The notes beneath the pieces were generated by a model. That model was not told where the DNA came from, searched no databases, and was given only the letters and a program-made list of their open reading frames with translations. Positions 1,636 to 58,108 of a DNA stretch of 64,000 nt are shown one piece after another (position 1 is the stretch's first letter; every line of letters begins with the position of its first letter). The stretch covers positions 20,336,001 through 20,400,000 of the forward strand of contig OZ320319.1 in assembly GCA_976226885.1 (NCBI GenBank). The letters run 5' to 3'. Source of the stretch: Iphione sp. A-MEVVRFRX5. Its lineage: Eukaryota. A program made the translations under genes and the position numbers.

Positions 1636-1785
1636 TAAGGCCCGGTTTCCTTGTGTCCGTTTTTTTTTTCCGTATACGGGGAGGTCCGTGAAGCTCGGTC
1701 GACATAATCCCCTTCTCCGGACGTGCACGGACATGCAGTTTTCATGTACGCGGGAAATGTGTCCGTGTACGCACTCAAGCGCCAA

Positions 1786-1810
1786 GTCACGTGATGACAC
1801 TCTGACGTCA
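1786..1810 (+). promoter_or_regulatory. Putative transposase promoter elements (E-box CACGTG 1788-1793, CRE TGACGTCA 1803-1810)
   Basis: Motif matches 115-137 bp upstream of the transposase ATG in the left subterminal region; sequence match only. Confidence 0.4.
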
Positions 1811-1924
1811 CTTGACCCATTTTACAGCGTCACCTGACCTCTTTTTAAGCGCGCGTAAAGCGGGTTTGTTTACTACTCAGGTGATCGCAGACCATATCGC
1901 TGACATTCTCCAAGAAAGTCCGCG

Positions 1925-2277
1925 ATGGACGAGATCGAATTAATGGAAACACTGCTGGAGGAGTTAGAGGAAAGTGTTTTGTGTGAGGAGGAGGAAACTG
2001 CAGCTGCATTGATAGCTCTGGCTGACTCGCATGGAAAAGACAAAAAGCGGCGGCATCAGTACTGGGTGCAGCCTATCCTTCAGCGTCGTGGAGAATTAGG
2101 TGCATTCCACACACTTGTGCAAGAGTTCCTCGAACTAAACGAAGGTTTTAAGGGCTACTTTCGACTGACAGTTCCTCAGTTTGAATATGTAGTTCGGAAA
2201 CTAACCCCTTCATTGGAGAGGGTGTCGCTGACACGTGAGGCTATTCCACCAAAGGAAAGAGTCGCCATTTTTTTAAG
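1925..2277 (+). CDS. Harbinger transposase exon 1 of 2; CDS join(1925..2277,3522..4461), 430 aa
   Basis: MDEIE...RRHQYWVQPILQRR...FKGYFRLTVPQF...AIPPKERVAIFLR is a typical Harbinger N-terminus. Donor AG|gtacat at 2278, phase 2, joins exon 2 in frame (R-YVAAGES). Confidence 0.93.
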
Positions 2278-2654
2278 GTACATATAATTACACTTTATTA
2301 CGTTCATAATGTCACATATAAGTAGTAGTGTGTAAAATATCAGTCGTAATAATTTTATTGAGAAGAAATCGCACAATATAATCTACCCCGTTAATAAATC
2401 GTAACTTGTACATATAGTGGACATTGTCATTCATATGTAAATGTACAATTCTGAGTCGTCGACATTTAGTAGTAGTACCTAATTTTGGTCCGCGATATAA
2501 AAGGACATTGTAAACGGAGAGTACAGCCATAGTAAACATTGCTGTTAAATGGTATATCACCGTTGTTCTAAATGTACATATCTGAGTCTCGGACAGTTGT
2601 TAGTAGTACAGAATTTGGTCCGCGATATAAATGTCCATGGAAAATGCCATAATT

Positions 2655-3309
2655 TCACATGGCATGGTACTGCTTCCCAATCTCGCTACATTGGTTATAT
2701 AAGTCTCTGTCGCCGAAGAGCTCTGGTGACGCTGGGCACTCTGAGTAGGAGTAGGTGCTAAGAGCAGATGAGTGACTCTCTTGAGCGACTTGACGTAGGC
2801 GTGCTGGCGTTGGTGGCGTCTGCTCGTAGTACTGACTGGGGACAGGTGCTCGTCCTGGTGGCGTTGATTGGTGGTCCTGCAATTGCTGCGAGTAATTATA
2901 GTTACCGTGAGTCTGTCTTGCTGGCAGCGAGTGTTGCACCTCGTAGAACACCTCAGAAATTTTTATTTGTAGTCTGGCCTGCTGCTCGGGCGAGAGTGCT
3001 CGAAATCTGGGAACAAATGATGCCCAAAACATCCAGGCATTGTCCCTCATCCAGTCCTTCTCTTCTCTGTCCTGTCGAGACAGATCTAGTTGTCTTTGTA
3101 GCAGCTCAATACGTTGCATGCTCTCCTCTCTCCTTTTCTCTGATGATTTCGCTAATTTCTGCATAACAGAGGCTATGTCGTCATCGTCATTCTTCCTTTT
3201 CTTCCCCTTCTTCGTCGACTCAGTTGACGTTGGTTCAGAGGCTGCTGCAGAAGTGGCAAAAGTCTCTGGCTTCTTTATTGGCTTAGGGGTCGAGGTGACA
3301 AGCGGAGGC
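2655..3309 (-). CDS. MADF-BESS protein exon 3 (basic KKGKKRK patch, BESS-like motif)
   Basis: Acceptor ttttacag|G keeps the frame. DNAWMFWASFVPRFRALSPEQQARLQIKISEVFYEV resembles a BESS motif. Stop at 2655-2657; minus-strand AATAAA at about 2354-2359. Confidence 0.88.
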
Positions 3310-3521
3310 CTGTAAAATGAAGTAGTTGAAGTCAGTCACATATAAATGAATGTACTGCATTATGTAAATGAATTGACTGCATTAATGAAAACCATTGTCA
3401 TCGTGGACATTAATATGTCCGCGACCTAGTCATATCTGACCATTTTCATCGCGGACATTTATATGTCTGCGACCTAATCAGAGTTGATGTGAAATTAAAA
3501 TATGCACTCATATATTTTCAG

Positions 3522-4461
3522 ATATGTTGCCGCTGGTGAGTCACAAAAAAGCTTGGGGTACCAGTATAGGATTGGACGCGCCACCGTTCATCGCATAATT
3601 GAAGAAGTTGCTGACGCTGTTAATGAGCACCTCTTCGCTGAAATGGTCACCCCAACAACACCTGAAGAGTGGGAGCTAGTGGCAGCCAACTTCCAGGAGG
3701 AGTGGCATTTTCCCAACTGTGTCGGTGCTATTGATGGCAAGCATATCAACATGTTTGCAGCAGTCAACAGTGGGTCCGTATTCTACAACTACAAGGGCCA
3801 CTTCTCCATTGTCCTCATGGCAGTGGTCGATGCCAATTACAATTTCCTGTATGTTGATGTTGGACGTGAGGGCAAGAACAGTGATGGCGGTATCTTTCAG
3901 AGGATGGACTTTGGTAGGGCCCTTCTCGACGGCGCACTGAATTTGCCATCTGCTAGGGTCCTGCCTGGAGCAGAACATTTAGGACACCTACCCTATGTGT
4001 TTGTGGGGGATGAGGCTTTCCCCCTACTGCCCAACCTTCTCAGACCATACCCAGGACGTGACCTCAATGACCGACATCGAATGTTCAACATGCGGCTATC
4101 TAGGGCTCGTCGGATGGTGGAGTCTACGTTTGGTATTTTGGCCGTCCGATGGAGAATCTTCCATACAAAGATTCTACTCCGTCCAACCACCCTCGCCAAG
4201 GTCGTCAAAGCCTGTTGCATTTTGCATAATCTCATCCAGAGCAGCAGCACCCCTGCAAAGATCAAGGTAGTAGCTGAGGCTGCTCGGGATGATGGTGAGG
4301 CCGCTGCCCTTGCCCCCCTTCCCAGAACAGCACACCGAATGCGCCAGGACGGTGTAAACGTCCGACACAAATACATGCAATACTTTGTTGACCATAACCC
4401 TCTCCACTGGCAAGAGGAATATGTGCAGCGGGGTACAGAGCCTACCACGTCACAGACCTGA
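3522..4461 (+). CDS. Harbinger transposase exon 2 (DDE_Tnp_4/HARBI1-like catalytic domain)
   Basis: Acceptor ttttcag|A at 3521/3522. Motifs FPNCVGAIDGKH, YNYKGHFSIVLMAVVDA, NSDGGIF, VFVGDEAFPL, SRARRMVESTFGILAVRWRI, ACCILHN; no stops or frameshifts. Confidence 0.97.
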
Positions 4462-4488
4462 ACTGATCCAGTGACAAGCTGTACTCAC

Positions 4489-4879
4489 CCAATGTCGATC
4501 CTGGCCCCATCAACCTCAACACCTGCTGGTTCGTCTTGCGACACATCAGTAACTTGTGAATCTGCCTGTGACTCTGCCTGAGAGTCACACTGCGTCTGCT
4601 GTTCTTGGTCGCATTCCTGTGATTGACTCCCTGGAGCCTCCGAATCCACTTGGACATCATCTGGCACCTCAGACGTCTCTTGCACTGGCGCCTCGTAGAC
4701 GAAGTTGGACACATAGGCCTGTTGATCATTGCAGAATTTGTCCAGAAAACCGAGGATATCATAGTATGGCCATTTACGTGTGGTTTTAGGTGCCTGGCCA
4801 CTCTTTGTTAGCCTGGCCTCCCGCCTCTTCTTGACATACTCGTCCCGCAATGTGCGCCACCTGGTCTTGCATTGCTCTA
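4489..4879 (-). CDS. MADF-BESS protein exon 2
   Basis: Acceptor ctgcag|TA. (L)EQCKTRWRTLRDEYVKK...KSGQAPKTTRKWPYYDILGFL completes the MADF domain. Donor GG|gtgagt at 4488, phase 2. Confidence 0.93.
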
Positions 4880-5195
4880 CTGCAGATGAATGTAAAATGT
4901 GAGAATTAAATGTCAGACCAATCTTCAATGCATTTGCTAATAATCACTGACCATTTTTATCATGGACTGATGTATTGATGTGTACCATTTTATTATTCGC
5001 TGACCATTGTATTATCTGAGACCTTTATCATTCCCTGCATATTATCGTTTGTATTAATCGCGGACCATTTATTTATCGCGGACCAATTATTTATCGCGGA
5101 CCATTTCTTACTTTTGTCGTGGACCGTAATGTTACTATTTCTAAATTAAAGTCCGGTAAATTAAAAACCAAAGAGAACATCAGTTCAAGGAATCT

Positions 5196-5762
5196 TTATT
5201 TCGAAAATTTCTGATCCGGGTAGATGGGCAGGTCCTCCTTGCCAGAGACAATGGCAGTCTGCAGACAGCGGATCAGGTAAGCCTTGAAGGAACCTGACCC
5301 CTTCTTGTAATTCCCCTCCAGAGTCTTGATTTCTTCCGGCGTGAGGGGCGTCCTGTCAACATCGTCCGGTTTAGTGGTCTCTGCAGTTGAACTGCCTCCA
5401 CCAGCTGCTCCTTTACTGGTGGCCATCTGGAGTGAGAGCCGCTCGAGATCACGGGCCAGGTGGTCAACCTGCTTGCCGATCTCATCACAGCGGCCACGCA
5501 TGTTCCTGTCCAGAAGTGCTGCGTCATCCCTCCTGTCCAACACCTCCATCTCAATGAGTTCCCGGAAGTGGGGGATCTCATGGAGGCTGCGGTTCACCCG
5601 CTGCATGTCCTCCCGCAATGACAGGATCTGGGACTGCTGCTCGCTGACGATGGCCTGTGTCACCAGGATCTGGTCGGTAACATGGCGCACCTGTTCCTGG
5701 AGGCTCCAGCTCTGTGTGTCAGGGGCCTGCGGCTGCTCTACCATTTGATGATGCTCCCCTAT
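5196..5762 (-). CDS. Third gene exon 5 (coiled-coil-like region and helical C-terminus)
   Basis: Acceptor cttctag|ATA; 188 open codons (LQEQVRHVTDQ...LARDLERLSLQM...GSFKAYLIRCLQTAI). An AATAAA overlaps the stop codon. Confidence 0.83.
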   Translation of the reverse strand: MGEHHQMVEQPQAPDTQSWSLQEQVRHVTDQILVTQAIVSEQQSQILSLREDMQRVNRSLHEIPHFRELIEMEVLDRRDDAALLDRNMRGRCDEIGKQVDHLARDLERLSLQMATSKGAAGGGSSTAETTKPDDVDRTPLTPEEIKTLEGNYKKGSGSFKAYLIRCLQTAIVSGKEDLPIYPDQKFSK

Positions 5763-5974
5763 CTAGAAGTAGAAAAAAACCAAACAGAATGGTCCACGAT
5801 TTAATGGTGTACATATGTATGTGAATATGTTTTTAATTTCAATAAATTGTATCTGAATGAAGGAAATATTGTTTTAGTATCGCTGACCAACAGTATTGTC
5901 CGCTATATCACTGACATTATGAAGGTTTCATTCAGTTAAGTTTCAATGAAATTGTGCGCTACATATGTAGTTAC

Positions 5975-6223
5975 CTCATGGGCCTCCGGCTGCTTGGGTT
6001 GGGCGTCTTGTGTGGCCTGCGGGCGCTTGGGTCGGGCATCTTGTGTGGCCTCCTGGCGCTTGGGTCGGGCGTCTTGTGTATCCTCCTGGCGCTTGGGTCG
6101 GGCGTCTTGTGTATCCTCCTGGCGCTTGGGTCGGGCGTCTTGTGTATCCTCCTGGCGCTTGGGTCGGGCGTCTTGTGTGTCAGGGGCCTGCGGCTGCTCT
6201 TCCATCTGATGATGCTCCCCTAT
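5975..6223 (-). CDS. Third gene exon 4 (6 more repeat units)
   Basis: Acceptor cttctag|ATA; IGEHHQMEEQPQAPDTQDARPKRQE...AHE; donor GAG|gtaact; 249 nt = 83 codons. Confidence 0.8.
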
Positions 6224-6455
6224 CTAGAAGTAGATGAAAACCAAACAGAATGGTCCAAGATTTAATGGTGTACATATGTATGTGAATATGTTTTTTATTT
6301 CAATAAAGTTCCATCTCAATCATCAATGTTGTATGTTGAATTATATCTGCATGAATGAAATATTGTTTTAGTATCGCTGACCAACAGTATTGTCCGCTAT
6401 ATCACTGACATTATTATTAAGTTGCAACGAAATTGTGCGTTACATATGTATTTAC

Positions 6456-7043
6456 CTCATGGGCCTCCTGGCGCTTGGGTCGGGCGTCTTGTTTAGCCTC
6501 CTGGCGCTTGGGTCGGGCGTCGGGTGTAGCCTCCTGGCGCTTGGGTCGGGCGTCGGGTGTAGCTTCCTGGCGCTTGGGTCGGGCGTCGGGTGTAGCCTCC
6601 TGGCGCTTGGGTCGGGCGTCGGGTGTAGCCTCCTGGCGCTTGGGTCGGGCGTCGGGTGTAGCCTCCTGGCGCTTGGGTCGGGCGTCGGGTGTAGCCTCCT
6701 GGCGCTTGGGTCGGGCGTCTTGTTTAGTCTCCTGGCACTTGGGTCGGGCGTCTTGTTTAGTCTCCTGGCGCTTGGGTCGGGCGTCTTGTTTACCCTCCTG
6801 GCGCTTGGGTCGGGCGTCTTGTTTACCCTCCTGGCGCTTGGGTCGGGCGTCTTGTTTACCCTCCTGGCGCTTGGGTCGGGCGTCAGGGGTGGCCTTGGGG
6901 GCTTTGGATTTGCCTTTAGGGGGAGCTGGCTGCTCCTCCTCCTCCTCCTCTTCCTCCGAATCATCCTCATCCTCGTCCTCCTCAGTGGTCTGGTCATCAG
7001 ATTCGCTCTCCTCCGTGCTGGATACGAAGATGGCCGCTACTGC
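6456..7043 (-). CDS. Third gene exon 3 (acidic tract plus 13 x 11-aa DARPKRQExxx repeats)
   Basis: Acceptor ataacag|GCA; AVAAIFVSSTEESESDDQTTEEDEDEDDSEEEEEEE...; donor GAG|gtaaat; 588 nt = 196 codons. Confidence 0.82.
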
Positions 7044-7224
7044 CTGTTATAATGGAACAGACACATGTAATTCTTATAGGCACAATCACATCAACGGAGA
7101 TATGAATTGAACTAGCAAAATCAATCACGGACTTTTCTTCCTTGTACACTATCAACTCAAATGAGACATGCATTAAACTAGCAAATCGTGGACTTTTATT
7201 CCTGAAATGTCAGCGACTAGATAC

Positions 7225-7358
7225 CTCAGCACACCACAGCGCCTCCTGGCGTTTTTCGAACTTTGCCAGGTCTTTCTCGTATTGCGCCCATCTCCGGTCG
7301 AACTCCTCCGGTGACAGGTTGGAGCGGCGCTGAGGCTTGGGGGGGCGCTTGTTTTCAA
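7225..7358 (-). CDS. Third gene exon 2
   Basis: Acceptor ttacttccag|TT; (V)ENKRPPKPQRRSNLSPEEFDRRWAQYEKDLAKFEKRQEALWCAE; donor GAG|gtatct; 134 nt, phase 1 in and phase 0 out. Confidence 0.78.
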
Positions 7359-7383
7359 CTGGAAGTAATTAACATCCATACTT

Positions 7384-7556
7384 TGACATTATTCATATAC
7401 AAAATACATGCATGTCGTGGACAGTCTCAGCATACTCCAACAAATAGTCAGCGACACATAATACTAACATTATTTGACATTATTCATATACAAAATACAT
7501 GCATGTCGTGGACAGTCTCAGCATACTCCAACAAATAGTCAGCGACACATAATACT
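7384..7556. repeat. Two-copy tandem repeat (about 91 bp) in third-gene intron 1
   Basis: tgacattattcatatacaaaatacatgcatgtcgtggacagtctcagcatactccaacaaatagtcagcgacacataatact, twice. Confidence 0.9.
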
Positions 7557-8289
7557 ATGCAAAGGGTGAATACGGCAGTGTCTAGTATAATCTATTCATT
7601 GCACGGGATGTGTGCTGCATTAGCCGCTACACTCTCCCCGGGCCTGCCTGCCATCAGCAGCAGCAGCAGCACCAGCCGCCGAGCATGTCTGCTCGACCTG
7701 AGTGTACCCCCCACAGTGCTGCCACTGTATTGTCTTGTGTGCTGCCGCTGGCTGCTTCCCGCTGACTGCCTCCCGCACCCCGGCTGTGTGCTCCCCATCG
7801 GCAGCGGCGGCGGCGGCGGCGGCGGCAGCAGCAGCATGCATGCAAGCATGCAAGCGCTGCGCCTGTGTGCCAGAGGATCGAGTGTAGCCCTTCTATGATG
7901 GCAGCGCACCGCCCGCGACATGCAACAGCGGCCGCCTGTGTGCTCGATCATGCAGTGTACCCCCTCCCCATCTCTGCCTCCCTCGACCCTCCCGCAGCAG
8001 CAGCGCCTACGGGCTCCACACATTTGATACCCAAGGCAGAATAATTTTAAGGAAAGTAATTTTTGTCGCTGACATTTTCAATGGAAACATGACTTAATTA
8101 AAAAACAGCCAGTCAAACTTTAACACACTTGAGAACTGTCCGCGAGACATGACATGCAAAATTTGAAAAACCTGAGAATTGCCCGCGATATAAGGTCCAA
8201 GATTATCCTTCTACAATGTCCGCGATTTTAATATCATTCCATGAAACAAATGCAAGCAGATACATGAAATAGGGAAAATGTTTACTCAC

Positions 8290-8545
8290 CACGAGCCAGA
8301 CGCTTTCTGCTCGCCCTCTTCAGAGCATTCACATGTGCTTTGAACTCGGCCGCCTTCTGAGGTGTTGAGGTTTTCCTCCTCCTGTATCGGCGACACACGG
8401 CTGCATGTGAAGTTGGGTCATAGTCAGATCCATGCTCTGATCCATTATCAGACTCAGCCACGTATGTTTTCTCTGCTGCTGCTTTCTTCTTCTTCTTCTT
8501 CTTGTGAGCCTTCGTGCGGCTACGATGCTTCTTTGGTGGGGGCAT
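8290..8545 (-). CDS. Unknown transposon-borne third gene, exon 1 of 5; CDS complement(join(5196..5762,5975..6223,6456..7043,7225..7358,8290..8545)), 597 aa
   Basis: MPPPKKHRSRTKAHKKKKKKK (NLS-like)...SDYDP...KRASRKRLAR. Donor G|gtgagt at 8289, phase 1. Start codon is inferred. Confidence 0.75.
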
Positions 8546-9000
8546 CCTGACGAATGATCAACGACCAAGTGTCGCCCTCCCCTGCTGCTCTGCTATTGTG
8601 ACCATCACCCCCCCTCCCCCTGCAGCAGCAGCATCACTCATGTCGCATTGCGGATATTGCAGCAGAGCAGGGCCCTACATGCTTCATTTGCATTCATGAA
8701 TATTCGACACATTGCGGAAGATTCTAATGCTCACAAACCCAACCCCTGGTGTTCAAATTAGAGAGATGTTACCCTTCAGACATAGACATGCTGGTATTTC
8801 ATATACTACAACGGGACCTACAAATATATGGTTTGTGTGATATTAGGAATGCAAAATTAAACATGCAAGGTGTATTATACTCTCACGTTGAGAGGGGATA
8901 TTATGTAGCCTGTAATCATACTCTTGCCCGCACTAGGACAGGGCTTCTCTTGAGCGCGACCTGTCAATCAAAAATGTGGGGAGGGTTCTCGCAGGACCTG

Positions 9001-9265
9001 TCGCTCATATCGCGTCAGTTGGGGTGAGGGGTTCGCATTCATCTCACTGTGTGCATGGAGGGCTTCATGTCGCTCACTGGGTCGCGGACAATGCCATACT
9101 CATGGACGTTTAAAACATACATGTAAAAATACACCTAACGCAACGTTTACAATCGCTCATATCGTGTCAATTGGGGTGAGGGGTTCTCATTCATCTCACT
9201 GTGTGCAAGGAGGGCTTCATGTCGTCCACCCTAGGCGCAGACAATGCAATACTCTTGGACATTTA
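9001..9265. repeat. Two-copy direct repeat, period about 152 bp
   Basis: tcgctcatatcg.gtca.ttggggtgaggggttc.cattcatctcactgtgtgca.ggagggcttcatgtcg at 9001 and about 9153. Confidence 0.88.
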
Positions 9266-9339
9266 TAACACATCCAAAGAAATGCAGAAACATTCTCTGA
9301 TAAACACAAATTTGTTTGGACATAAACAAGAAATAGAAA

Positions 9340-9720
9340 AAGTCAGCGAGGTTAACCAGTGATATAATGGTCCACGACATTGGTCAGTGATTAGAATGGT
9401 CCCCGACATTGCAATGAAACATATATTGGCATGGACATAAGCAAGAAAAATAAAAGGTCAGCGAGGTTCACCAGTTATTAGAATGGTCCCCGACATTGCA
9501 ATGAAACATATATTGGCATGGACATAAGCAAGAAAAATAAAAGGTCAGCGAGGTTCACCAGTGATTAGAATGGTCCACGACATTGGTCAGTGATTAGAAT
9601 GAAACATATATTGGCATGGACATAAACAAGAAAAATAAAAGGTCAGCGAGGTTCACCAGTGAGATAATGGTCCACGACATTGGTCAGTGACTGGAATGAA
9701 ACATATTGGCATGGACAGAA
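9340..9720. repeat. Degenerate tandem array (about 85-100 bp unit, about 4 copies) in MADF intron 1
   Basis: Repeated catggacataa..aagaaaaataaaaggtcagcgaggttcaccagt...ggtccacgacatt; units carry GTCAGCGA and GTCCACGA (or the variant GTCCCCGA) motifs. Confidence 0.9.
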
Positions 9721-9746
9721 ACAGAAGCATATTAAAGTGCACTTAC

Positions 9747-9912
9747 GTGATACACTTGGGGCGGTTTCTTTCATAGCCTGCCAAATGGCCTTCCAGCTGT
9801 TGGCTGCCTTGATCTGGTCCTTGTAGTCTTTCCTGTACATGTCGTAGAGGTTCTGGTGTTGCCGCACTAGCTCAATGAGCTGTTCGCTTCGCTGAACAGT
9901 GAAGATCTTCAT
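9747..9912 (-). CDS. MADF-BESS (Myb/SANT-like) protein exon 1 of 3; CDS complement(join(2655..3309,4489..4879,9747..9912)), 403 aa
   Basis: MKIF...EQLIELVRQHQNLYDMYRKDYKDQIKAANSWKAIWQAM is the first half of a MADF domain. Donor C|gtaagt at 9746, phase 1. Confidence 0.92.
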
Positions 9913-9980
9913 GTCGAATTTTCGTTCCTTCCCGCGTCTGCTTGAGCTTCTCGAATATGGTCCGAGAGGCTCGCATGCAC

Positions 9981-10064
9981 CTTTTTTATACTACTACTAC
10001 CCACGTGGATTCGCGCGACCACGTGTTTGTGTATGACGGTCAGCGACCACATGACCCTCACGTG
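9981..10064 (-). promoter_or_regulatory. Putative MADF gene promoter (TATAAAAA at 9990-9983, three CACGTG E-boxes)
   Basis: TATA about 70 nt upstream of the ATG at 9912; CACGTG at 10002, 10020 and 10059. Confidence 0.5.
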
Positions 10065-13000
10065 ACCGAGAATGTCCGCGACACGCCCCTCTTACGTAAT
10101 TTTCCGGAGCCCGGAGTCCGTGCTGCGGAGAAATTTACGAGCAGTGACCGTTTTCGGTCTCCGGACCCCGGACCACGCACCACGCACTACCACGCACCCG
10201 GACACATGGAAACACTCCAGTGCATTAGCATAGTCCCGTTTTTTTCCGCACCACGGAGTCCGTGGTGCGGAAAAAAAAAACGGACACAAGGAAACCGGGC
10301 CTAAGAGTGCTTTCAATATATGCAGGGTGTCTAGGTTACTGTAACAAAATGTTGCACCAATATTTTCCATTTGCTGAGAGGCTCCAGATCTCCCCCACAA
10401 TCCGGTACAAAATGCAGAAGGGACCAATAAGCGTGCATACTCCTTCCCAACACAATGCAGACCTCGAAACGCATGATTTCTTTTATCCATAATGGTGTGA
10501 GCCCTGCTTCTAGGAATTGAGAGCCTTTTTTAACAACTGTGATTTCATTAGGTGAGTGCATCACTTAATCCAGTTAACGTGATAAGCAGTTCTGTAGATT
10601 GTCACGCCCTCCAGCACATAGAATTATTCAGCCTCAAGCAAAGTGCACCAACCCACCGTAAACATATGATTTGTCTATATACATGTTGATACTTTACCAA
10701 CACACTAAAACTAACATAAAAGAATTGACAATTTTGATTTTTGCTTTACCTTCACAAATTAGGCAGATGAACTCGCTTGTAAAACGTACGATTTTTTATT
10801 ATTAATCTTGTACATGTACTTAATATTAAAATGTAATGTTCTCCCATAAAAGTTTTGTTACTGTAGATTTGTAGTATAACACTGAAACTTGCAACAAGAA
10901 TGACAGAAGACTAGCGATGAAAAAATAATGTTACAGCAAAGCCTCATAGTAGAAAAGGAAATTAAGAGTTCCAACCTGTCCCTGTCACCAACAAGCCCTA
11001 CTCTACCCTACATGTGGTTCTCAACGTGAATTCAGGATTCTGTTCCTGAAATTCAAACACAAAAAGGCACCCGAAGGTGAATTTGAACTTACGTAAACAC
11101 TACAAGGTCTAGAGTAGTCTTTCATCATATAGAAACATAAATACTTTTTGGTTCTATCAAAATTGGTCTCTCCCATATCTTGTCTCCTCTGGGATCTGGT
11201 CTTTAATGAGAGTAGACTACATGTGTATTGCAAATTTTATCTGCTTTAAGTTTTTGTCTTTATGAGAATCATTCATTTCCTCCCGTAGAAGCCTTGGACA
11301 CAATTAAGCATTCATAAAGAACAAACAATTGATATCCATATGTTTATTTACACTGACAGTAATGTAGGCAGCCACCAGTTCTTCCTTGTCTCTGTTCATA
11401 TGATAAACCTGTATAAATACCTTTCACATCCAGGTCCCTACATGTTGGTTCACCAGTCACACGTTTTCGTAAACATCGGCTAGACAGTTCACGTTCGACA
11501 CGAATGAAAACTAACCTTAACAACATGAAACTCTGTAATCATTTTCTTTTTAGAATAAGTTTGTAATATCCAAACAGACAGCTCTCTCTCAGTTTGAGAG
11601 GGGAAATTATAAGGTCATCTTGAACCAGAGAGATGCATTCCGCCAAAGGAACACCTTCAACCCCTTTCAACTCAAAAACTAAGCGGGGGGGGGGCTTGTC
11701 ATGGATCCTTGAAATAGACTATTTTGGATAGCACGAAGAAGATGAAACGTGCAGCATCCATTGATTTTGTAACACTTTCTGCATCACCACAGGTGTATTG
11801 TGAACAGGACACTATGTTGAGAAGTTTACTTTCACGATACAAAAAGAAGACATAAAGATGGAAGACGGGCCACTGCAAAACGCATTGTCGGTTATACCCC
11901 ACACTTCTAATATAATAGGCAATGAGTATTGACTGGAGCTGGGTCTCAAATATGTAGGTAATACAAAGTTTCAGATAATTTTAGTTAGTTTGGTTAGTCG
12001 GTGAATAATGGTGATGGCATATGTTTGCTCGCAATTTACACCATATAACTGAAAACCGTTTTCGATATATAGGCCTACATATATATACAAACTGATAATG
12101 TTTACAGATAAACTAAATTCGTTATTGACATATATAGCATAAATCTGCAAGTTACTCTTATAATTATGTAGAAATGTGTTTTGTAGCTCCACTGATCAAG
12201 AGATGATAGGAATTAAAGTTTCATTTTGTATAACAGGATCTGACGAGAAATTGAGTCGTGTTGCATATCCAACCCAATAGGTGGCAGCACTGTGGCGGAT
12301 CCACAGAGAAGTAGGGATCTCTGCAATTTTTGCGTGATTTGAACTGAACCTGTCTTCAGACTTTTTTCAAAAGATTTTTATAAAGCATTGTCATCGCCAC
12401 ATGCAGAAAAGCAAGTAGTACTTATATCGTGGAAAACTTTGGCAGGGGCATACAATTGCAGCATTAAAGGTCATGGATTTTAGTTTGATACTGATTCAAA
12501 TATTATTTATTATTATAGCAGTAGATATCTTTGCCCTCTCCCTTTTAAGTAATTCTTAGACGAGAGGGTTGGGGGTGTTGTGTCGTCAGCACTGCATAGT
12601 ATGAAAATATCACACATGGATGGTTTATGTGCTGCTCGGATCTGTGGGCTGCATACCACCATGCAAAAAGTAAAGGAGACCAAGTAAAGCTGCAAAACTA
12701 CATTTTCCAGACTTGATTGGGACTTTTCTTAGACTGATGGTTACTCCTACCTTGTATATTTTTACACTAACTATATACAATATTGTCCAAAGGTAGTCCC
12801 AACCAAACCTCATGGCAGAAGTTCATTTATATTTGCCGAGAAAAATACCACTAAATGTGTGTAGGGAAGCAGAGCAGCTGTCCCTACCCCAGTTTTCAAC
12901 ACAGGTGGGAGAGAGGGAGGGGCGTAGAGAGAATGCCTAAGGCGCTCGTTTATGCACTTTTTTAAAAAGGCATTATCAAGCCCCTGTTAACATGATGCAT

Positions 13001-13270: not shown

Positions 13271-14329
13271 TTAGTCGTCGTCGGAGATGGTTTGCGTGGC
13301 GGAATTGACGTTGATCAGCGGTCGATAGCTATCTCGGACATCGTAACAACAGCACACGCGACTAGTGGCGCCACGGACGTCGGGTAGGAGAGTCACGGCG
13401 AGGATGAGAAGCAGCATCTCGACACCCGAGTAGAGCCAGTGGGTGACGACCCAGGGGCCCAGGCGGGAGATCTGAACGGCGTCGTCGATGACCACCAAGA
13501 GCATGGCGATGTCCACGACGACCACCAAGACGACGCTACCGCTGTGAACGACGGGGACGTCCAGGTCGGTCACGTTCGCGTTCCCCTGCCTTCCCCCACC
13601 GCGGCGGCTTTTCTTACAGAAGGCCACCACCAGGGCGGCGCTGGACACCGCCAGGGCCATGGCGGGCAGGATGTTGGCCACCAGCTGGTTCAGGAGCACC
13701 TGTAGGTGGCGCGCGCTGCGGTTGGTGACCACGTAGCAACCCACACTGGCGTGGTGACTGTCGCTGGAGCTGAGGGCTCCGCGCACCTTGTCACTGGCGA
13801 TGTCCTCGTTCATGGCGAAGTTGCGAATGATGCCGAAGAAGAGCCCCACCGCCCAGGGAATGATGATGACGGCGAGACGACTGGGGGTCTTGATGATTCT
13901 GGCATAGAGAAGCGGCCACTTGAGGGCCACCAGGCGCTCCACCGTCGCTGCCAGCAGCGTGTAGGGCAGAAGGATGGACTCCACGTCCAGCAGGACCAGG
14001 TAGAGGCTGCAGTAGGCCGGGGTGAGCCTGGCGCCACGCACCTCCTCGTGGATGGTCCCCGGACGGACGAGCAGGCTGAAGAGGACGGTGGCGGCCGCCA
14101 GACTGGCGAGCAACTGGTGGAAGAGCTGGTGCTGCAGGTGGCGGTGGGCACAGAGGAGAACAAGCACGCAGACGGCCAGTAGAGTCACACAGCCCACGAT
14201 CAGAGACTCCGTGACGACGAAACTGACAGTCAGGAGGCTGTACGGGTCCGGTGGTGTTGTTGGTGTTGACAATGCCACACTCAGTGGTGTGCTGTTCAGT
14301 GGTGGGGACATGATGTTGTTGGCGGCCAT
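13271..14329 (-). CDS. Intronless divergent rhodopsin-like (class A) 7TM GPCR, 352 aa, orphan
   Basis: Single ORF with high GC3 and about seven hydrophobic segments. N-terminal NST sequon, Cys at the top of TM3 (AYC) and in ECL2 (GCY), DRY-position motif TVERLVALKWPLLY. Confidence 0.88.
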   Translation of the reverse strand: MAANNIMSPPLNSTPLSVALSTPTTPPDPYSLLTVSFVVTESLIVGCVTLLAVCVLVLLCAHRHLQHQLFHQLLASLAAATVLFSLLVRPGTIHEEVRGARLTPAYCSLYLVLLDVESILLPYTLLAATVERLVALKWPLLYARIIKTPSRLAVIIIPWAVGLFFGIIRNFAMNEDIASDKVRGALSSSDSHHASVGCYVVTNRSARHLQVLLNQLVANILPAMALAVSSAALVVAFCKKSRRGGGRQGNANVTDLDVPVVHSGSVVLVVVVDIAMLLVVIDDAVQISRLGPWVVTHWLYSGVEMLLLILAVTLLPDVRGATSRVCCCYDVRDSYRPLINVNSATQTISDDD

Positions 14330-55699: not shown

Positions 55700-57487
55700 A
55701 TACAGCTGGATAGGCTGATACATGTGTGTATCACCAATGATATTGTGGTTTTCTTTCTGGCCACGCATGTATTTTTTCCTGTCTAACTGACACTTGGCCA
55801 TGTGATCCACAAGCTTACTATACACGACGCCGAAATTAAGAAATGACGCTGGTGTAAGCTCAGCCTACAATGTACCAGTTTCCCAAATCTCAAAGGCTCT
55901 ACAGTATTGCGTCACAAGCAAGCCTCCACCACTCCCACGGTGTAAATCCACTATATACAAATGTGCTGACATTGCCAAAGCGGCTTTGCTGCCGTGCTTA
56001 TGTGGTCGCCGCGGTCAGCGAGCGATCCTGTGCTTGATCTTTCACAGGTCAGAGGTGCCAACCCTGGCGACGGAGGTGGGGGGACTGAAAGGAGCACACT
56101 TTCAACTGGAGTTCATGTGGTGATAAAGAGTACCGTACCCTTAAATGTATTCCTTTTTTCTGTGCATCACGAGAGCCTCACCCTGTCTCTCCTTCCTTCC
56201 AGTGCTCTCCAATTATATGTTAAAGTTCGTTAATTCATTTATATTTTAGGAAGACAGCCTGACTGACTGACAAACTCACTCACTCACTCACTCACTCACT
56301 CACTCACTCACTCACTCACTCACTCTTACCCCCTCTTTCACNNNNNNNNNNNNNNNNNNNNNNNNNNNNNNNNNNNNNNNNNNNNNNNNNNNNNNNNNNN
56401 NNNNNNNNNNNNNNNNNNNNNNNNNNNNNNNNNNNNNNNNNNNNNNNNNNNNNNNNNNNNNNNNNNNNNNNNNNNNNNNNNNNNNNNNNNNNNNNNNNNN
56501 NNNNNNNNNNNNNNNNNNNNNNNCCAGTTGTGTTCCAACCTACCTCTCGGTTTTAAGCCTCGCCATGACCTCTATTCCCCTAGTCTTGACCTCTTACAAT
56601 ACAGCATACAATAAAGCACGTCGGTCTAGTTATCGGACACACGAGAGACGTAAACAAGATAGGGTGGAGGTGGGAAAGGCCATATCCCGAACACCCCAGA
56701 TTAGAGGAGCGACAAGAAGGCTGGGACCCATACAGCGTGAAAAGTTCCTAAAGGGCTCTTTCCATGACTCAGGCCAGCTGAATGACCAATTTGTCAACAG
56801 GTGTTTATCAGTTGCTACTTTCAATGTCTGCAAAATCCGATCCAGCATCAGATGGCGACCAACTGGCCTGATAGCAAACCTGTCTGGGTCCAGTTTTTCA
56901 TCAGACCATCAGTATGTCAGACCATCACTACTTATAGGAACAAGCACTCTCACACTCACACACACATGCACACACAACACACTCACACACATTCACACAT
57001 ACTCATACACACAAATATGCACACACAACACTCTCACAAACATACATGTACATGTACATGCACACACAACACACATACATAATCACACATGCAATACACT
57101 CAGACACACATATACACACACAACACACATACACACAACACACATACACACAACACACATACACGACCCAGTCTCTCTCTCACACACACACATGCACACA
57201 CTATACACACATGCATTGTCCAAATTAGGTCACTGACGCTGCACAGGCAGTCAGACCCATGCAAACACCATCTCAAAAATTGCGGTCTGAACATCAGCCT
57301 GATGGGGGGTTTGATATATGGTCTGATATGCAACCTGAGACACGGACAGAGCCCTAACTAAAGACAGGAACCGCTCAGCCCTATGATCCCTTGCCCTGGG
57401 AAGTTGTGTTTTCGGTGATCATAATATTGAAAGCTATTAAGTGGGTGAAAGACAATTCCTGCTCTTCAGGTGTGCTTCCTAGATTAA

Positions 57488-58108
57488 GGCCCGGTTTTCT
57501 TGTGTACGGATTTTTTTCTGTACTGCGTGATGGTGCAGAAAATCGGATGCTTTTCTGGACCTGCACGGACNNNNNNNNNNNNNNNNNNNNNNNNNNNNNN
57601 NNNNNNNNNNNNNNNNNNNNNNNNNNNNNNNNNNNNNNNNNNNNNNNNNNNNNNNNNNNNNNNNNNNNNNNNNNNNNNNNNNNNNNNNNNNNNNNNNNNN
57701 NNNNNNNNNNNNNNTGGAGGTCGAAGCATATCTGTGGAAATTGTGCATTTTTTTGTGAGGACGAAGCATATTGGTGGAAATTGTGCAGCTTTTTGTGGAG
57801 GCCTAAACATATTTGTGGAAATTGTGCAGTTTTTATGCAATTGATATGCAAATTCAAAAATATATCACAACATCTTATATATGATACATAGTTTTTCTGT
57901 TTCTTAAAATGCCTCAAACCTCCTTTTATATACTTCTAGTGTATCCATGCTCCGGAATCCAGGAAAAAAATTAACATTGCCTGTTTTCGGACCACGGACC
58001 ATGCACACAGATGCATGGGAACACTCCAGTACATTGTCAGTCCCATTATTTTCTGTACCACATAGTCCATGGTCCAGGGAGAAAATCCGTACACAAGGAA
58101 ACCGGGCC
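57488..58108. mobile_element. Non-autonomous Harbinger related to the 1639-10301 element (spans an N gap)
   Basis: Ends GGCCCGGTTT(T/C)CTTGTGTACGG; both subterminal regions align by eye with those of the autonomous element. Flanks differ (TAA versus TTA). Confidence 0.8.

What the first reader, a model, noticed from the sequence alone, without database searches (positions are those of the whole stretch)
1897..10081. About 35 copies of a CpG-containing 8-mer (TCGYKGAC / GTCMRCGA) mark the non-coding DNA of the whole transposon
Seen: a manual count gives about 36 matches in 8.66 kb (e.g. 1897, 1918, 2488, 2618, 3401, 3417, 3449, 4997, 5058, 5076, 5094, 5117, 5792, 5880, 6374, 7186, 7209, 7415, 7447, 7506, 7538, 8066, 8138, 8218, 9082, 9342-9670, 10039, 10074). 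Roughly 1 is expected at uniform base composition. Only about 2 fall in coding exons, and I noticed just one in the other 55 kb (near 56013). They occur in both orientations, often next to exon borders, and are amplified by local tandem duplications. Established: the Myb-like protein of zebrafish Harbinger3_DR binds short subterminal repeats, and VANC proteins bind short motifs accumulated in non-coding tandem repeats of VANDAL elements to remove silencing. Inference: an element-wide binding code for the MADF protein or the third protein, possibly a sequence-specific anti-silencing or methylation-sensing system in an animal transposon.
Basis: partly seen in the sequence, partly recalled or inferred. 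Interest (0 to 1): 0.85.

Follow-up and report, generated by a model that had tools for sequence, protein, structure and literature searches.

The report
Transposon interior saturated with one DNA word
An intact three-gene Harbinger transposon in an animal genome repeats one short DNA word about 90 times more often than chance in its introns and untranslated DNA but not at its tips, which looks like landing sites for a protein that marks or regulates the element, though no binding has been shown.

Summary
TCGYKGAC/GTCMRCGA occurs 39 times in the 64-kb window. Of these, 36 lie in the 8,661-bp Harbinger element (1640-10300): 33 non-coding, 1 on the transposase start codon, 2 coding. Dinucleotide shuffles of the non-coding DNA expect 0.38. 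Outside the element the count is at chance (3 found, 3.0 expected). After merging copies with shared flanks, about 25 independent sites remain. Unbiased k-mer ranking recovers the same word.

Refinements:
- Only three words are used (TCGCGGAC, TCGCTGAC, TCGTGGAC).
- Position 3 tolerates A or T, so the CpG is common but not obligatory.
- Sites are not biased towards exon borders.
- The word is absent from the terminal 200 bp, where a different repeat (nCACGGAC) sits. A co-resident MITE keeps that repeat but has no copy of the 8-mer.
- Ten sister Harbinger loci (transposase 44-56% identical, none with a third gene) have no element-wide word, only subterminal arrays at most.

Best reading: a selected array of binding sites for an element-encoded protein, most likely MADF-BESS, acting on the element's chromatin or transcription rather than on transposition. 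It resembles plant VANC/VANDAL. Binding, methylation and expression are untested.

The parts
1640..10300 (.). Complete PIF/Harbinger element, 8,661 bp, flanked by the 3-bp TSD TAA (1637-1639 and 10301-10303)
   Evidence: 38-nt inverted repeat 1635-1672 / 10268-10305, 97% complementary; sequence read
1640..1800 (.). Left TIR plus subterminal array of five CGGAC-core repeats (nCACGGAC type); contains no strict 8-mer
10100..10300 (.). Right subterminal array of six CGGAC-core repeats plus the right TIR; contains no strict 8-mer; 10189-10300 is shared with the MITE
1925..4461 (+). Transposase gene, 2 exons (1925-2277, 3522-4461), 431 aa, DDE_Tnp_4
   Evidence: open spliced model with GT/AG junctions; Pfam DDE_Tnp_4 E = 5e-30
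2655..9912 (-). MADF-BESS gene, 3 exons (9912-9747, 4879-4489, 3309-2655), 404 aa. The MADF domain is split across exons 1 and 2, and exon 3 lies inside the transposase intron
   Evidence: Pfam MADF N-terminal half E = 1.2e-7, C-terminal half E = 2.4e-8, weak BESS
5196..8545 (-). Third gene, 5 exons (8545-8290, 7358-7225, 7043-6456, 6223-5975, 5762-5196), 598 aa. It is an orphan with a basic N-terminus, 11-aa repeats and a coiled-coil C-terminus, and it is nested in MADF intron 1
   Evidence: open spliced model; no Pfam family; no relatives
1897..1925 (.). Convergent pair of the word (TCGCTGAC at 1897, GTCCGCGA at 1918) abutting the transposase ATG
2456..2625 (.). Two 130-bp repeat units, each ending in GTCCGCGA (2488, 2618) with a degenerate partner (2456, 2587); lies in the transposase intron and MADF 3' region
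3401..3472 (.). Two palindromic pairs with an 8-bp spacer (3401/3417 and 3449/3465)
   Evidence: (I9)
4944..5124 (+). Seven same-orientation copies, including an 18-bp x3 tandem repeat, between MADF exon 2 and the end of gene 3
5792..6409 (.). Copies in gene-3 introns 3 and 4 (5792, 5880, 5908 and the duplicated set 6253, 6374, 6402)
7125..7545 (.). Copies in gene-3 intron 2 and the start of intron 1: 7125, 7186/7209, and the 91-bp duplication carrying 7415/7447 and 7506/7538
8066..8225 (.). Four copies in gene-3 intron 1 next to exon 1 (8066, 8138, 8195, 8218)
9082..9690 (.). Region upstream of gene 3, inside MADF intron 1: 9082, 9100, 9253, and an 87-bp x3.3 tandem array with alternating TCGCTGAC / TCGTGGAC / TCACTGAC, all in minus orientation
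9960..10081 (-). Three copies upstream of the MADF start codon, interspersed with three CACGTG E-boxes
57488..58108 (.). Non-autonomous MITE with the same TIR, TSD TTA and three CGGAC-core repeats; no copy of the word in its 477 readable bases (a 144-nt N gap was left untouched)

Best explanation
The word is a recognition sequence kept by selection in the autonomous element's free-to-vary DNA (introns, UTRs, inter-gene spacers). Its effective form is TC-[G>A>T]-[C/T]-[G/T]-GAC followed by C/A and an A/T-rich tail. It forms a dense array of about 50 sites at roughly 11 per kb of non-coding DNA. An element-encoded DNA-binding protein loads onto this array. The best candidate is the MADF-BESS protein, the only product with a recognisable sequence-specific DNA-binding domain. 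The word is a close variant of the family's subterminal repeat (CACGGAC versus CGCGGAC). The array is not part of the cut-and-paste machinery: it is excluded from the termini and missing from the MITE. The likely role is to mark the whole autonomous copy in cis, most plausibly keeping its three promoters and gene bodies transcriptionally open by recruiting chromatin modifiers, as Harbinger-derived MADF/Myb proteins are known to do. Shown: the distribution, statistics, variant spectrum and terminal exclusion of the word, and its absence in relatives. Inferred: that a protein binds it, which protein that is, and what binding does.
For: Enrichment is about 90-fold over shuffles and is confined to the element. 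About 25 flank-independent sites have random flanks but an intact core, which neutral divergence of old duplicates cannot give. Unbiased k-mer ranking puts the word first in non-coding DNA. One-mismatch variants are 5-fold enriched and concentrated at a single tolerated position (TCA 10, TCT 5, TTG 0; 7 versus 0 after collapsing duplicates, p = 0.016), as expected for a recognition sequence and not for CpG decay. The orientations are balanced (25 plus, 26 minus), which points to duplex DNA rather than RNA. Sites cluster in groups of 2-5 with 13-37 bp spacing and lie just upstream of all three start codons. In AT-rich introns, 22 of 43 CpGs lie inside the word. There are no copies in either terminal 200 bp, where eleven nCACGGAC-type repeats lie, and the MITE keeps those repeats only. 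Sister L003's subterminal array mixes GTCCGTG with GTCCGCG, which links the word to the family's presumed Myb/MADF sites. The MADF domain is intact in an open 404-aa gene. Precedents: the Harbinger3_DR Myb-like protein binds a 9-bp motif (PMC9710019); fish ADF-1L, a Harbinger-derived MADF protein, binds its own locus and recruits the acetyltransferase KAT2B (PMC11893794); Arabidopsis HDP2 acts in the IDM1 acetyltransferase complex against hypermethylation (PMC5339849); VANC21 motifs accumulate in non-coding and intronic tandem repeats (PMC5735166).
Against: There are no binding, expression or methylation data, and no sequencing run was listed. Only one copy of this family could be examined, so selection is inferred from within-copy statistics. 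Between internal duplicates, motif columns diverge at about half the rate of flanks, but this is not significant (4.1% versus 8.5%, p = 0.10). Ten sister loci that encode MADF proteins lack any dispersed word, so having a MADF protein is not enough. The dispersed word differs from the subterminal repeat in its 5' half, so a single MADF domain may not read both.
Confidence: 0.45

Rival explanations
1. The orphan third protein, alone or with MADF, reads the word. On this view the element carries a VANC-like accessory gene, and that gene's arrival allowed or drove the spread of the word through the interior.
For: None of the ten sister loci gives a tblastn hit to gene 3 and none has a dispersed word. 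Gene 3 is open across 5 exons, with a strongly basic N-terminus and tandem 11-aa basic repeats. VANC proteins also carry tandem peptide repeats (PMC5735166).
Against: Gene 3 has no recognisable DNA-binding domain or any homologue. The association rests on one element examined here plus one unchecked note. The word is related to the family's subterminal repeat, which points to MADF.
Confidence: 0.17
2. The sites bind a host transcription factor or chromatin protein. The element has accumulated a homotypic cluster to secure expression (for example in the germline) or insulation, with no element-encoded reader.
For: Transposons commonly carry host factor sites. This element's two terminal promoter regions already contain host-type sites (CACGTG four times, and one TGACGTCA). 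Copies sit immediately upstream of all three start codons.
Against: Sites fill every intron over 8.6 kb rather than promoter-sized patches. The word is at chance frequency in the other 54.5 kb, which includes a host gene. Related elements in other hosts show no such cluster.
Confidence: 0.18
3. The sites are auxiliary transposition sites: extra landing pads that concentrate the MADF-transposase complex on the autonomous copy (cis-preference) or help synapsis.
For: The word shares the GGAC/GAC core with the subterminal repeats. Harbinger Myb-like proteins recruit the transposase to DNA (PMC9710019).
Against: The word is absent from both terminal 200-bp regions and from the readable part of the MITE that shares the TIRs. 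Internal sites would compete with the ends. Ten related elements manage without them.
Confidence: 0.1
4. There is no function: the word is a by-product of how the non-coding DNA grew (repeated duplication of a seed unit) or of a local mutational bias.
For: Eleven of 36 copies are demonstrably recent duplicates, and five tandem or segmental duplications carry the word. Motif columns are not significantly better conserved than flanks between duplicates (p = 0.10).
Against: Twenty-five sites share no flanking similarity yet keep 8 of 8 core bases. The variant spectrum is position-specific and asymmetric. Only 3 of 16 TCG-NN-GAC words are used. The word is excluded from the termini.
Confidence: 0.08

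Closest known systems
VANC21 / VANDAL21 anti-silencing system of Arabidopsis (Hosaka et al. 2017, PMC5735166)
   Same: A short word (9 bp there, 8 bp here) is highly enriched in the non-coding DNA and introns of one DNA-transposon family, rare elsewhere, and amplified by local tandem repeats. The element carries an accessory gene beyond the transposition genes. In both cases motif density rather than single sites stands out.
   Different: VANDAL belongs to the Mutator superfamily in a plant, whereas this is a PIF/Harbinger element in an animal. No VANC homologue is present. VANC21 motifs are arrayed in one orientation, while these are balanced overall. Binding and hypomethylation are demonstrated there and untested here.
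Subterminal Myb-like binding sites of Harbinger3_DR (Sinzelle et al. 2008, as cited in PMC9710019)
   Same: Same transposon superfamily, with a short repeated motif presumed to be read by the element's Myb/MADF protein. This element also has such repeats (nCACGGAC) in its terminal 160-200 bp, and so does sister L003.
   Different: The 8-mer under study is not subterminal. It is absent from the terminal 200 bp and fills the interior instead, and the co-resident MITE does not carry it.
Harbinger-derived chromatin regulators: fish ADF-1L-KAT2B (PMC11893794) and Arabidopsis HDP1/HDP2-IDM1 (PMC5339849)
   Same: MADF/Myb proteins of Harbinger origin bind DNA sequence-specifically and recruit histone acetyltransferase activity. 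ADF-1L binds and activates its own locus in cis, and HDP2 prevents hypermethylation. This gives a plausible effector mechanism for a MADF-bound array.
   Different: Those are domesticated host genes acting at host loci. Here the protein would still be part of an apparently active transposon, acting on about 50 sites within itself.
Subterminal multi-copy transposase or TnpA sites of maize Ac/Ds and En/Spm
   Same: Many copies of a short, CpG-containing motif in both orientations are read by an element-encoded protein. For Spm, TnpA binding also counteracts methylation of the element.
   Different: Those arrays are confined to a few hundred bp at each end and are needed for transposition. Here the termini lack the word.

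Membership tests
PIF/Harbinger superfamily | DDE transposase of the DDE_Tnp_4 / Plant_tran type | tested here: met
   Pfam PF13359 E = 5e-30 on exon 2; 3059 homologues, best 50-65% identity
PIF/Harbinger superfamily | Second gene encoding a Myb/SANT/MADF DNA-binding protein | tested here: met
   MADF_DNA_bdg matched in two halves on exons 1 and 2, which splice in frame into a 404-aa ORF
PIF/Harbinger superfamily | Terminal inverted repeats and a 3-bp TWA target-site duplication | tested here: met
   38-nt TIRs 97% complementary, TAA on both sides; the MITE has TTA
Harbinger3_DR-type subterminal Myb-binding repeats | [quoted passage not shown] | tested here: not met
   No strict 8-mers in the first or last 200 bp. 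The nCACGGAC repeats meet this criterion instead, with 5 on the left and 6 on the right
Harbinger3_DR-type subterminal Myb-binding repeats | Retained in non-autonomous derivatives mobilised by the same family | tested here: not met
   The MITE 57488-58108 has no strict or relaxed copies in its 477 readable bases but has three CGGAC-core repeats. A 144-nt N gap is unread
VANC-type sequence-specific anti-silencing system | Short motif over-represented in the non-coding regions of the cognate element and rare elsewhere | tested here: met
   33 non-coding copies against 0.38 expected; 3 copies against 2.98 expected outside, within this 64-kb window only
VANC-type sequence-specific anti-silencing system | Motif amplified and evolving through tandem-repeat formation, including in introns | tested here: met
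   18-bp x3, 87-bp x3.3 and 91-bp x2 tandem repeats plus 130-bp and 461-bp duplications all carry the word
VANC-type sequence-specific anti-silencing system | [quoted passage not shown] | tested here: inconclusive
   Local same-orientation runs exist (4944-5124 all plus; 9342-10081 all minus), but overall the count is 25 plus and 26 minus, with several convergent pairs
VANC-type sequence-specific anti-silencing system | Element encodes a VANC-family protein | tested here: not met
   No Pfam family or homologue for gene 3. The other two genes are the transposase and MADF
VANC-type sequence-specific anti-silencing system | Element-encoded protein binds the motif and causes loss of DNA methylation | not testable with these tools
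   No sequencing run was listed for this sequence, and there are no binding or methylation data

The most novel reading that the evidence does not exclude
Animal Harbinger transposons of this genome carry family-specific self-recognition codes: a short word spread through the interior of the autonomous element (TCGYKGAC here; a different word in another three-gene family, according to note s1-317806). The word is read by element-encoded proteins, either MADF-BESS or the orphan coiled-coil third protein or both, to keep the element free of silencing. This would be the first VANC-like sequence-specific anti-silencing system in an animal, and it would have evolved independently in a different transposon superfamily.
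Probability: 0.2. Interest if true: 0.88.

Novelty: new variant of a known kind. Interest (0 to 1): 0.62.

Why it matters
As far as I found, sequence-specific counter-silencing by a transposon's own protein is documented only in plants (VANC/VANDAL; Spm TnpA from my own knowledge). My literature searches turned up no animal DNA transposon with an element-wide binding code. This element offers a compact, testable case:
- an apparently intact copy with three open genes;
- a sharply defined 8-bp word at about 50 sites;
- an internal control, because the termini and a MITE use a different repeat;
- possibly a second family in the same genome with a different word.

If a protein encoded by the element binds the word and alters chromatin, it would show convergent evolution of self-marking in transposons. 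It would also help explain why Harbinger MADF/Myb proteins are so often domesticated as chromatin regulators. If nothing binds, the element is still a striking example of word accumulation that needs another explanation.

Tried and rejected
- **Read-level evidence.** The look-up of sequencing runs listed no run, so read laying could not be used. Expression, splicing and copy variation remain untested.
- **Same-family copies.** The window holds only a MITE related at its right end. The protein database has no transposase above 65% identity, and that hit sits on a 799-bp contig.
- **Gene 3 relatives.** Pfam, two ESM Atlas feature searches, a word-indexed search of 5.8 billion proteins and an exhaustive phmmer against 1.84 billion representatives gave nothing beyond weak coiled-coil noise.
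- **Sister-element words.** AGATCTA in L001 and L007 turned out to be a palindrome counted on both strands, about 5 sites near one end. ATAAACG in L008 is a 13-bp subterminal tandem array. AGTATGC in L010 is 7 scattered copies, some coding.
- **Exon-border association.** Rejected.
- **CpG-decay origin of the variants.** Rejected on the TCA/TTG asymmetry.
- **Conservation in internal duplicates.** A trend only (p = 0.10).
- **Structure prediction of the MADF domain.** Not attempted.


Full report
**1. The element**

The finding lies in a complete PIF/Harbinger transposon at 1640-10300 (8,661 bp).
- It has 38-nt terminal inverted repeats that are 97% complementary, and TAA on both sides.
- I built spliced models with canonical GT/AG junctions, and all three are open:
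  - a transposase on the plus strand (1925-2277, 3522-4461; 431 aa; DDE_Tnp_4 E = 5e-30);
  - a MADF-BESS protein on the minus strand (9912-9747, 4879-4489, 3309-2655; 404 aa), whose two MADF halves on exons 1 and 2 join in frame;
  - a third minus-strand gene of five exons (8545-5196; 598 aa) nested in MADF intron 1.
- The transposase and MADF genes are interleaved: MADF exon 3 lies in the transposase intron, and transposase exon 2 lies in MADF intron 2. Earlier notes of this scan described this layout for this and other copies.
- Coding DNA is 4,299 bp and non-coding DNA is 4,362 bp.

**2.

- An exact scan finds 39 matches to TCGYKGAC/GTCMRCGA in the 64-kb window. Of these, 36 are inside the element, one lies 60 bp outside the left TIR, and two lie far away at 13511 and 56014.
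- Inside the element, 33 are non-coding, one straddles the transposase ATG, and two are coding.
- Dinucleotide-preserving shuffles of the non-coding segments give a mean of 0.38 and a maximum of 4 in 2000. The coding expectation is 0.44.
- Outside the element, 3 copies are found against 2.98 expected.
- An unbiased comparison of all k-mers in the element's non-coding DNA against the rest of the window puts TCGCGGAC (11 versus 0) and TCGCTGAC (13 versus 1) first among 8-mers, their 7-mers first among 7-mers, and CGGAC first among 5-mers. Over the whole element, only words from the 33-bp coding tandem repeat of gene 3 rank higher.

**3. It is not a few recent duplications**

- Five local duplications carry the word: 18 bp x3, 87 bp x3.3, 91 bp x2, 130 bp x2, and a 461-494-bp segmental duplication.
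- Merging all copies whose +-25-nt flanks are at least 60% identical still leaves 25 groups.
- In the alignment of all sites, the flanks beyond -2 and +5 carry no information, while the eight core bases are intact. Old duplicates whose flanks had diverged to randomness could not keep 8 of 8 core bases without selection or a sequence-specific generating process.

**4. Refining the word**

- Of the 16 possible TCG-NN-GAC words, only three are used: CG (12 in, 0 out), CT (15 in, 1 out) and TG (9 in, 2 out).
- The extended preference is T-[A/G] before the core, and [C/A]-[A/T]-T-T after it.
- One-mismatch variants are also about 5-fold enriched in the non-coding DNA (28 copies; 6.4 per kb versus 1.3 per kb outside).
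- The variants concentrate at position 3: G to A occurs 10 times and G to T 5 times, while position 2 C to T never occurs. Methyl-CpG decay would give TTG and TCA equally. The asymmetry is 7 to 0 after collapsing duplicates, p = 0.016. It fits a recognition sequence with one tolerant position.
- With that position relaxed (TCDYKGAC) there are 51 sites in the element (5.9 per kb) against 16 outside (0.29 per kb), split 25 plus and 26 minus. They are typically in groups of 2-5 spaced 13-37 bp apart, and include several convergent pairs in which a CTGAC-type word faces a YGGAC-type word.
- Eleven of these 51 sites have no CpG.
- The strict word still holds 46 of the 189 non-coding CpGs in 6.3% of the bases, and 22 of 43 CpGs in the AT-rich introns.
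- The balanced orientation argues for duplex-DNA recognition rather than an RNA signal.

**5. The exon-border claim fails**

The claimed association with exon borders is not real. The mean within-intron rank of site-to-border distance is 0.485, where 0.5 is random, and p = 0.39.

**6. A two-tier layout**

- The terminal 160-200 bp at each end carry a different repeat with a CGGAC core, mostly nCACGGAC. There are five copies on the left and six on the right.
- The strict 8-mer is absent from the first and last 200 bp.
- A 621-bp MITE at 57488-58108 has the same TIR (1-2 mismatches in 21 nt), a TTA target duplication, and 77% identity to the element's last 112 bp.
- The MITE has three CGGAC-core repeats (GCACGGAC, CCACGGAC, TTTCGGAC) but no strict or relaxed copy of the 8-mer in its 477 readable bases. 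Its 144-nt N gap was left unread.
- So the termini use one repeat, which non-autonomous relatives keep, and the interior of the autonomous element uses another. This argues against a role for the 8-mer in the transposition reaction.
- The two repeats are related: CACGGAC and CGCGGAC differ by one transition. TCACGGAC, at 1684 and 7125, satisfies both.

**7. Relatives**

- A search with transposase exon 2 returned 3059 homologues, none above 65% identity.
- I fetched ten loci on long contigs. They come from three unnamed ENA assemblies, Haliotis asinina and Holothuria leucospilota, with transposases 44-56% identical. I mapped this element's three proteins on them and delimited four elements by TIR plus TSD.
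- None has a tblastn match to gene 3. Where both MADF exons are seen, they lie close together.
- This window's 8-mer is not enriched in the loci scanned for it: 0-2 hits per 20 kb in L001-L003, and it is not among the top words of any sister.
- No sister has a word of its own with comparable element-wide density. The best candidates dissolve on inspection:
  - L003 has CACGGACA confined to both subterminal regions, in an array that mixes GTCCGTG with GTCCGCG.
  - L008 has a 13-bp subterminal tandem array.
  - L001 and L007 have a handful of palindromic TAGATCTA sites.
- The classic Harbinger layout, with subterminal repeats only, is therefore the norm in the sampled clade. This element is the exception, and it is also the only one with a third gene.

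**8. The third gene**

- Gene 3 is an orphan. There is no Pfam family, no convincing ESM Atlas neighbour, no hit among 5.8 billion proteins, and only weak coiled-coil-type matches in an exhaustive phmmer search.
- It has a strongly basic N-terminus, an acidic stretch, about 25 copies of an 11-aa basic repeat, and a coiled-coil C-terminal part.
- Nothing identifies a DNA-binding fold, but nothing excludes one.

**9. Leads from the scan's earlier notes**

- Note s1-317806 describes another three-gene Harbinger on the same sequence piece, 58.5 Mb away, saturated with a different dispersed word (TTACGA). Its follow-up read that word as protein landing sites.
- I could not fetch that element. I checked only that TTACGA is not enriched here (0.35 versus 0.24 per kb).
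This is a lead, not evidence. The scan has thus met this kind of feature before on other DNA.

**10. Interpretation**

- The most economical reading is a selected array of protein-binding sites in the DNA that is free to vary, specific to the autonomous element and separate from the transposition signals.
- MADF-BESS is the prime candidate reader. It has the only recognisable sequence-specific domain, and the word is a near variant of the family's subterminal repeat. By analogy with Harbinger3_DR, the Myb-like protein binds that repeat (PMC9710019).
- A cis-regulatory or anti-silencing effect is plausible. Harbinger-derived MADF/Myb proteins recruit acetyltransferases: fish ADF-1L recruits KAT2B and binds its own locus (PMC11893794), and Arabidopsis HDP2 acts in the IDM1 complex against hypermethylation (PMC5339849).
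- The distribution mirrors VANC21 motifs in VANDAL21 (PMC5735166).
- Against a simple MADF story, ten MADF-encoding relatives lack such an array.
- A host factor, an auxiliary transposition role and a neutral by-product remain possible, with decreasing likelihood.

**11. Limits**

- Only one copy of the family was examined.
- There are no reads, methylation data or binding data.
- The host species is not identified. The nearest protein to the neighbouring GPCR is 56% identical and unnamed.
- The background comparison rests on 54.5 kb.
- All functional statements are inference.

Noticed in passing
window 57488-58108: A 621-bp MITE with the same TIR as the 8.66-kb Harbinger and a TTA target duplication. 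Its right 112 bp is 77% identical to the element's end. It contains three ~33-bp internal tandem units and a 144-nt N gap, which was left unread.
   Followed up: partly
window 2432, 5810-5812, 5960-5962, 6271-6273, 6441-6443: A second over-represented word, TACATATG/CATATGTA (palindromic core ACATATGT), occurs 9 times in the element and never in the other 54.5 kb. Most copies lie close to the ends of gene-3 introns, and some are part of the 461-bp duplication.
   Followed up: no
window 7600-8030: A GC-rich block in gene-3 intron 1, made of three ~168-bp units with CAG and CGG runs. It is the only long non-coding stretch of the element without the 8-mer. Its role (promoter, CpG island or captured DNA) is unknown.
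   Followed up: no
window 1788-1810 and 10002-10064: Host-type promoter motifs lie at both ends: CACGTG plus TGACGTCA upstream of the transposase ATG, and three CACGTG boxes upstream of the MADF ATG, interleaved with copies of the 8-mer.
   Followed up: no
window 5713-6455: A 461-494-bp segmental duplication inside gene 3 duplicates an intron and adds an in-frame exon (5975-6223). Together with the 33-bp tandem repeat, this gives about 25 copies of an 11-aa basic peptide repeat.
   Followed up: partly
window 1925-4879: The transposase and MADF-BESS genes are interleaved on opposite strands, each with an exon inside the other's intron. The whole third gene sits in the 4.87-kb MADF intron 1. In sister loci where both MADF exons map, that intron is short.
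   Followed up: partly
window 13271-14329 (-): A single-exon rhodopsin-family GPCR ORF (7tm_1, E = 6e-12). The stray 8-mer at 13511 lies inside it. The nearest database protein is only 56% identical and unnamed.
   Followed up: partly
L009 12621-14990; L004 10001-21729: In sister locus L009, a LINE-type gene (reverse transcriptase plus endonuclease domains) lies between the transposase and the Pfam-annotated MADF exon. The Haliotis asinina locus L004 holds two tandem copies of a related Harbinger about 9 kb apart.
   Followed up: no
window 1579: One exact copy of the word (TCGTGGAC) lies 60 bp outside the left TIR in the flanking DNA. It is probably chance, given 3 outside hits against 3.0 expected.
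   Followed up: yes
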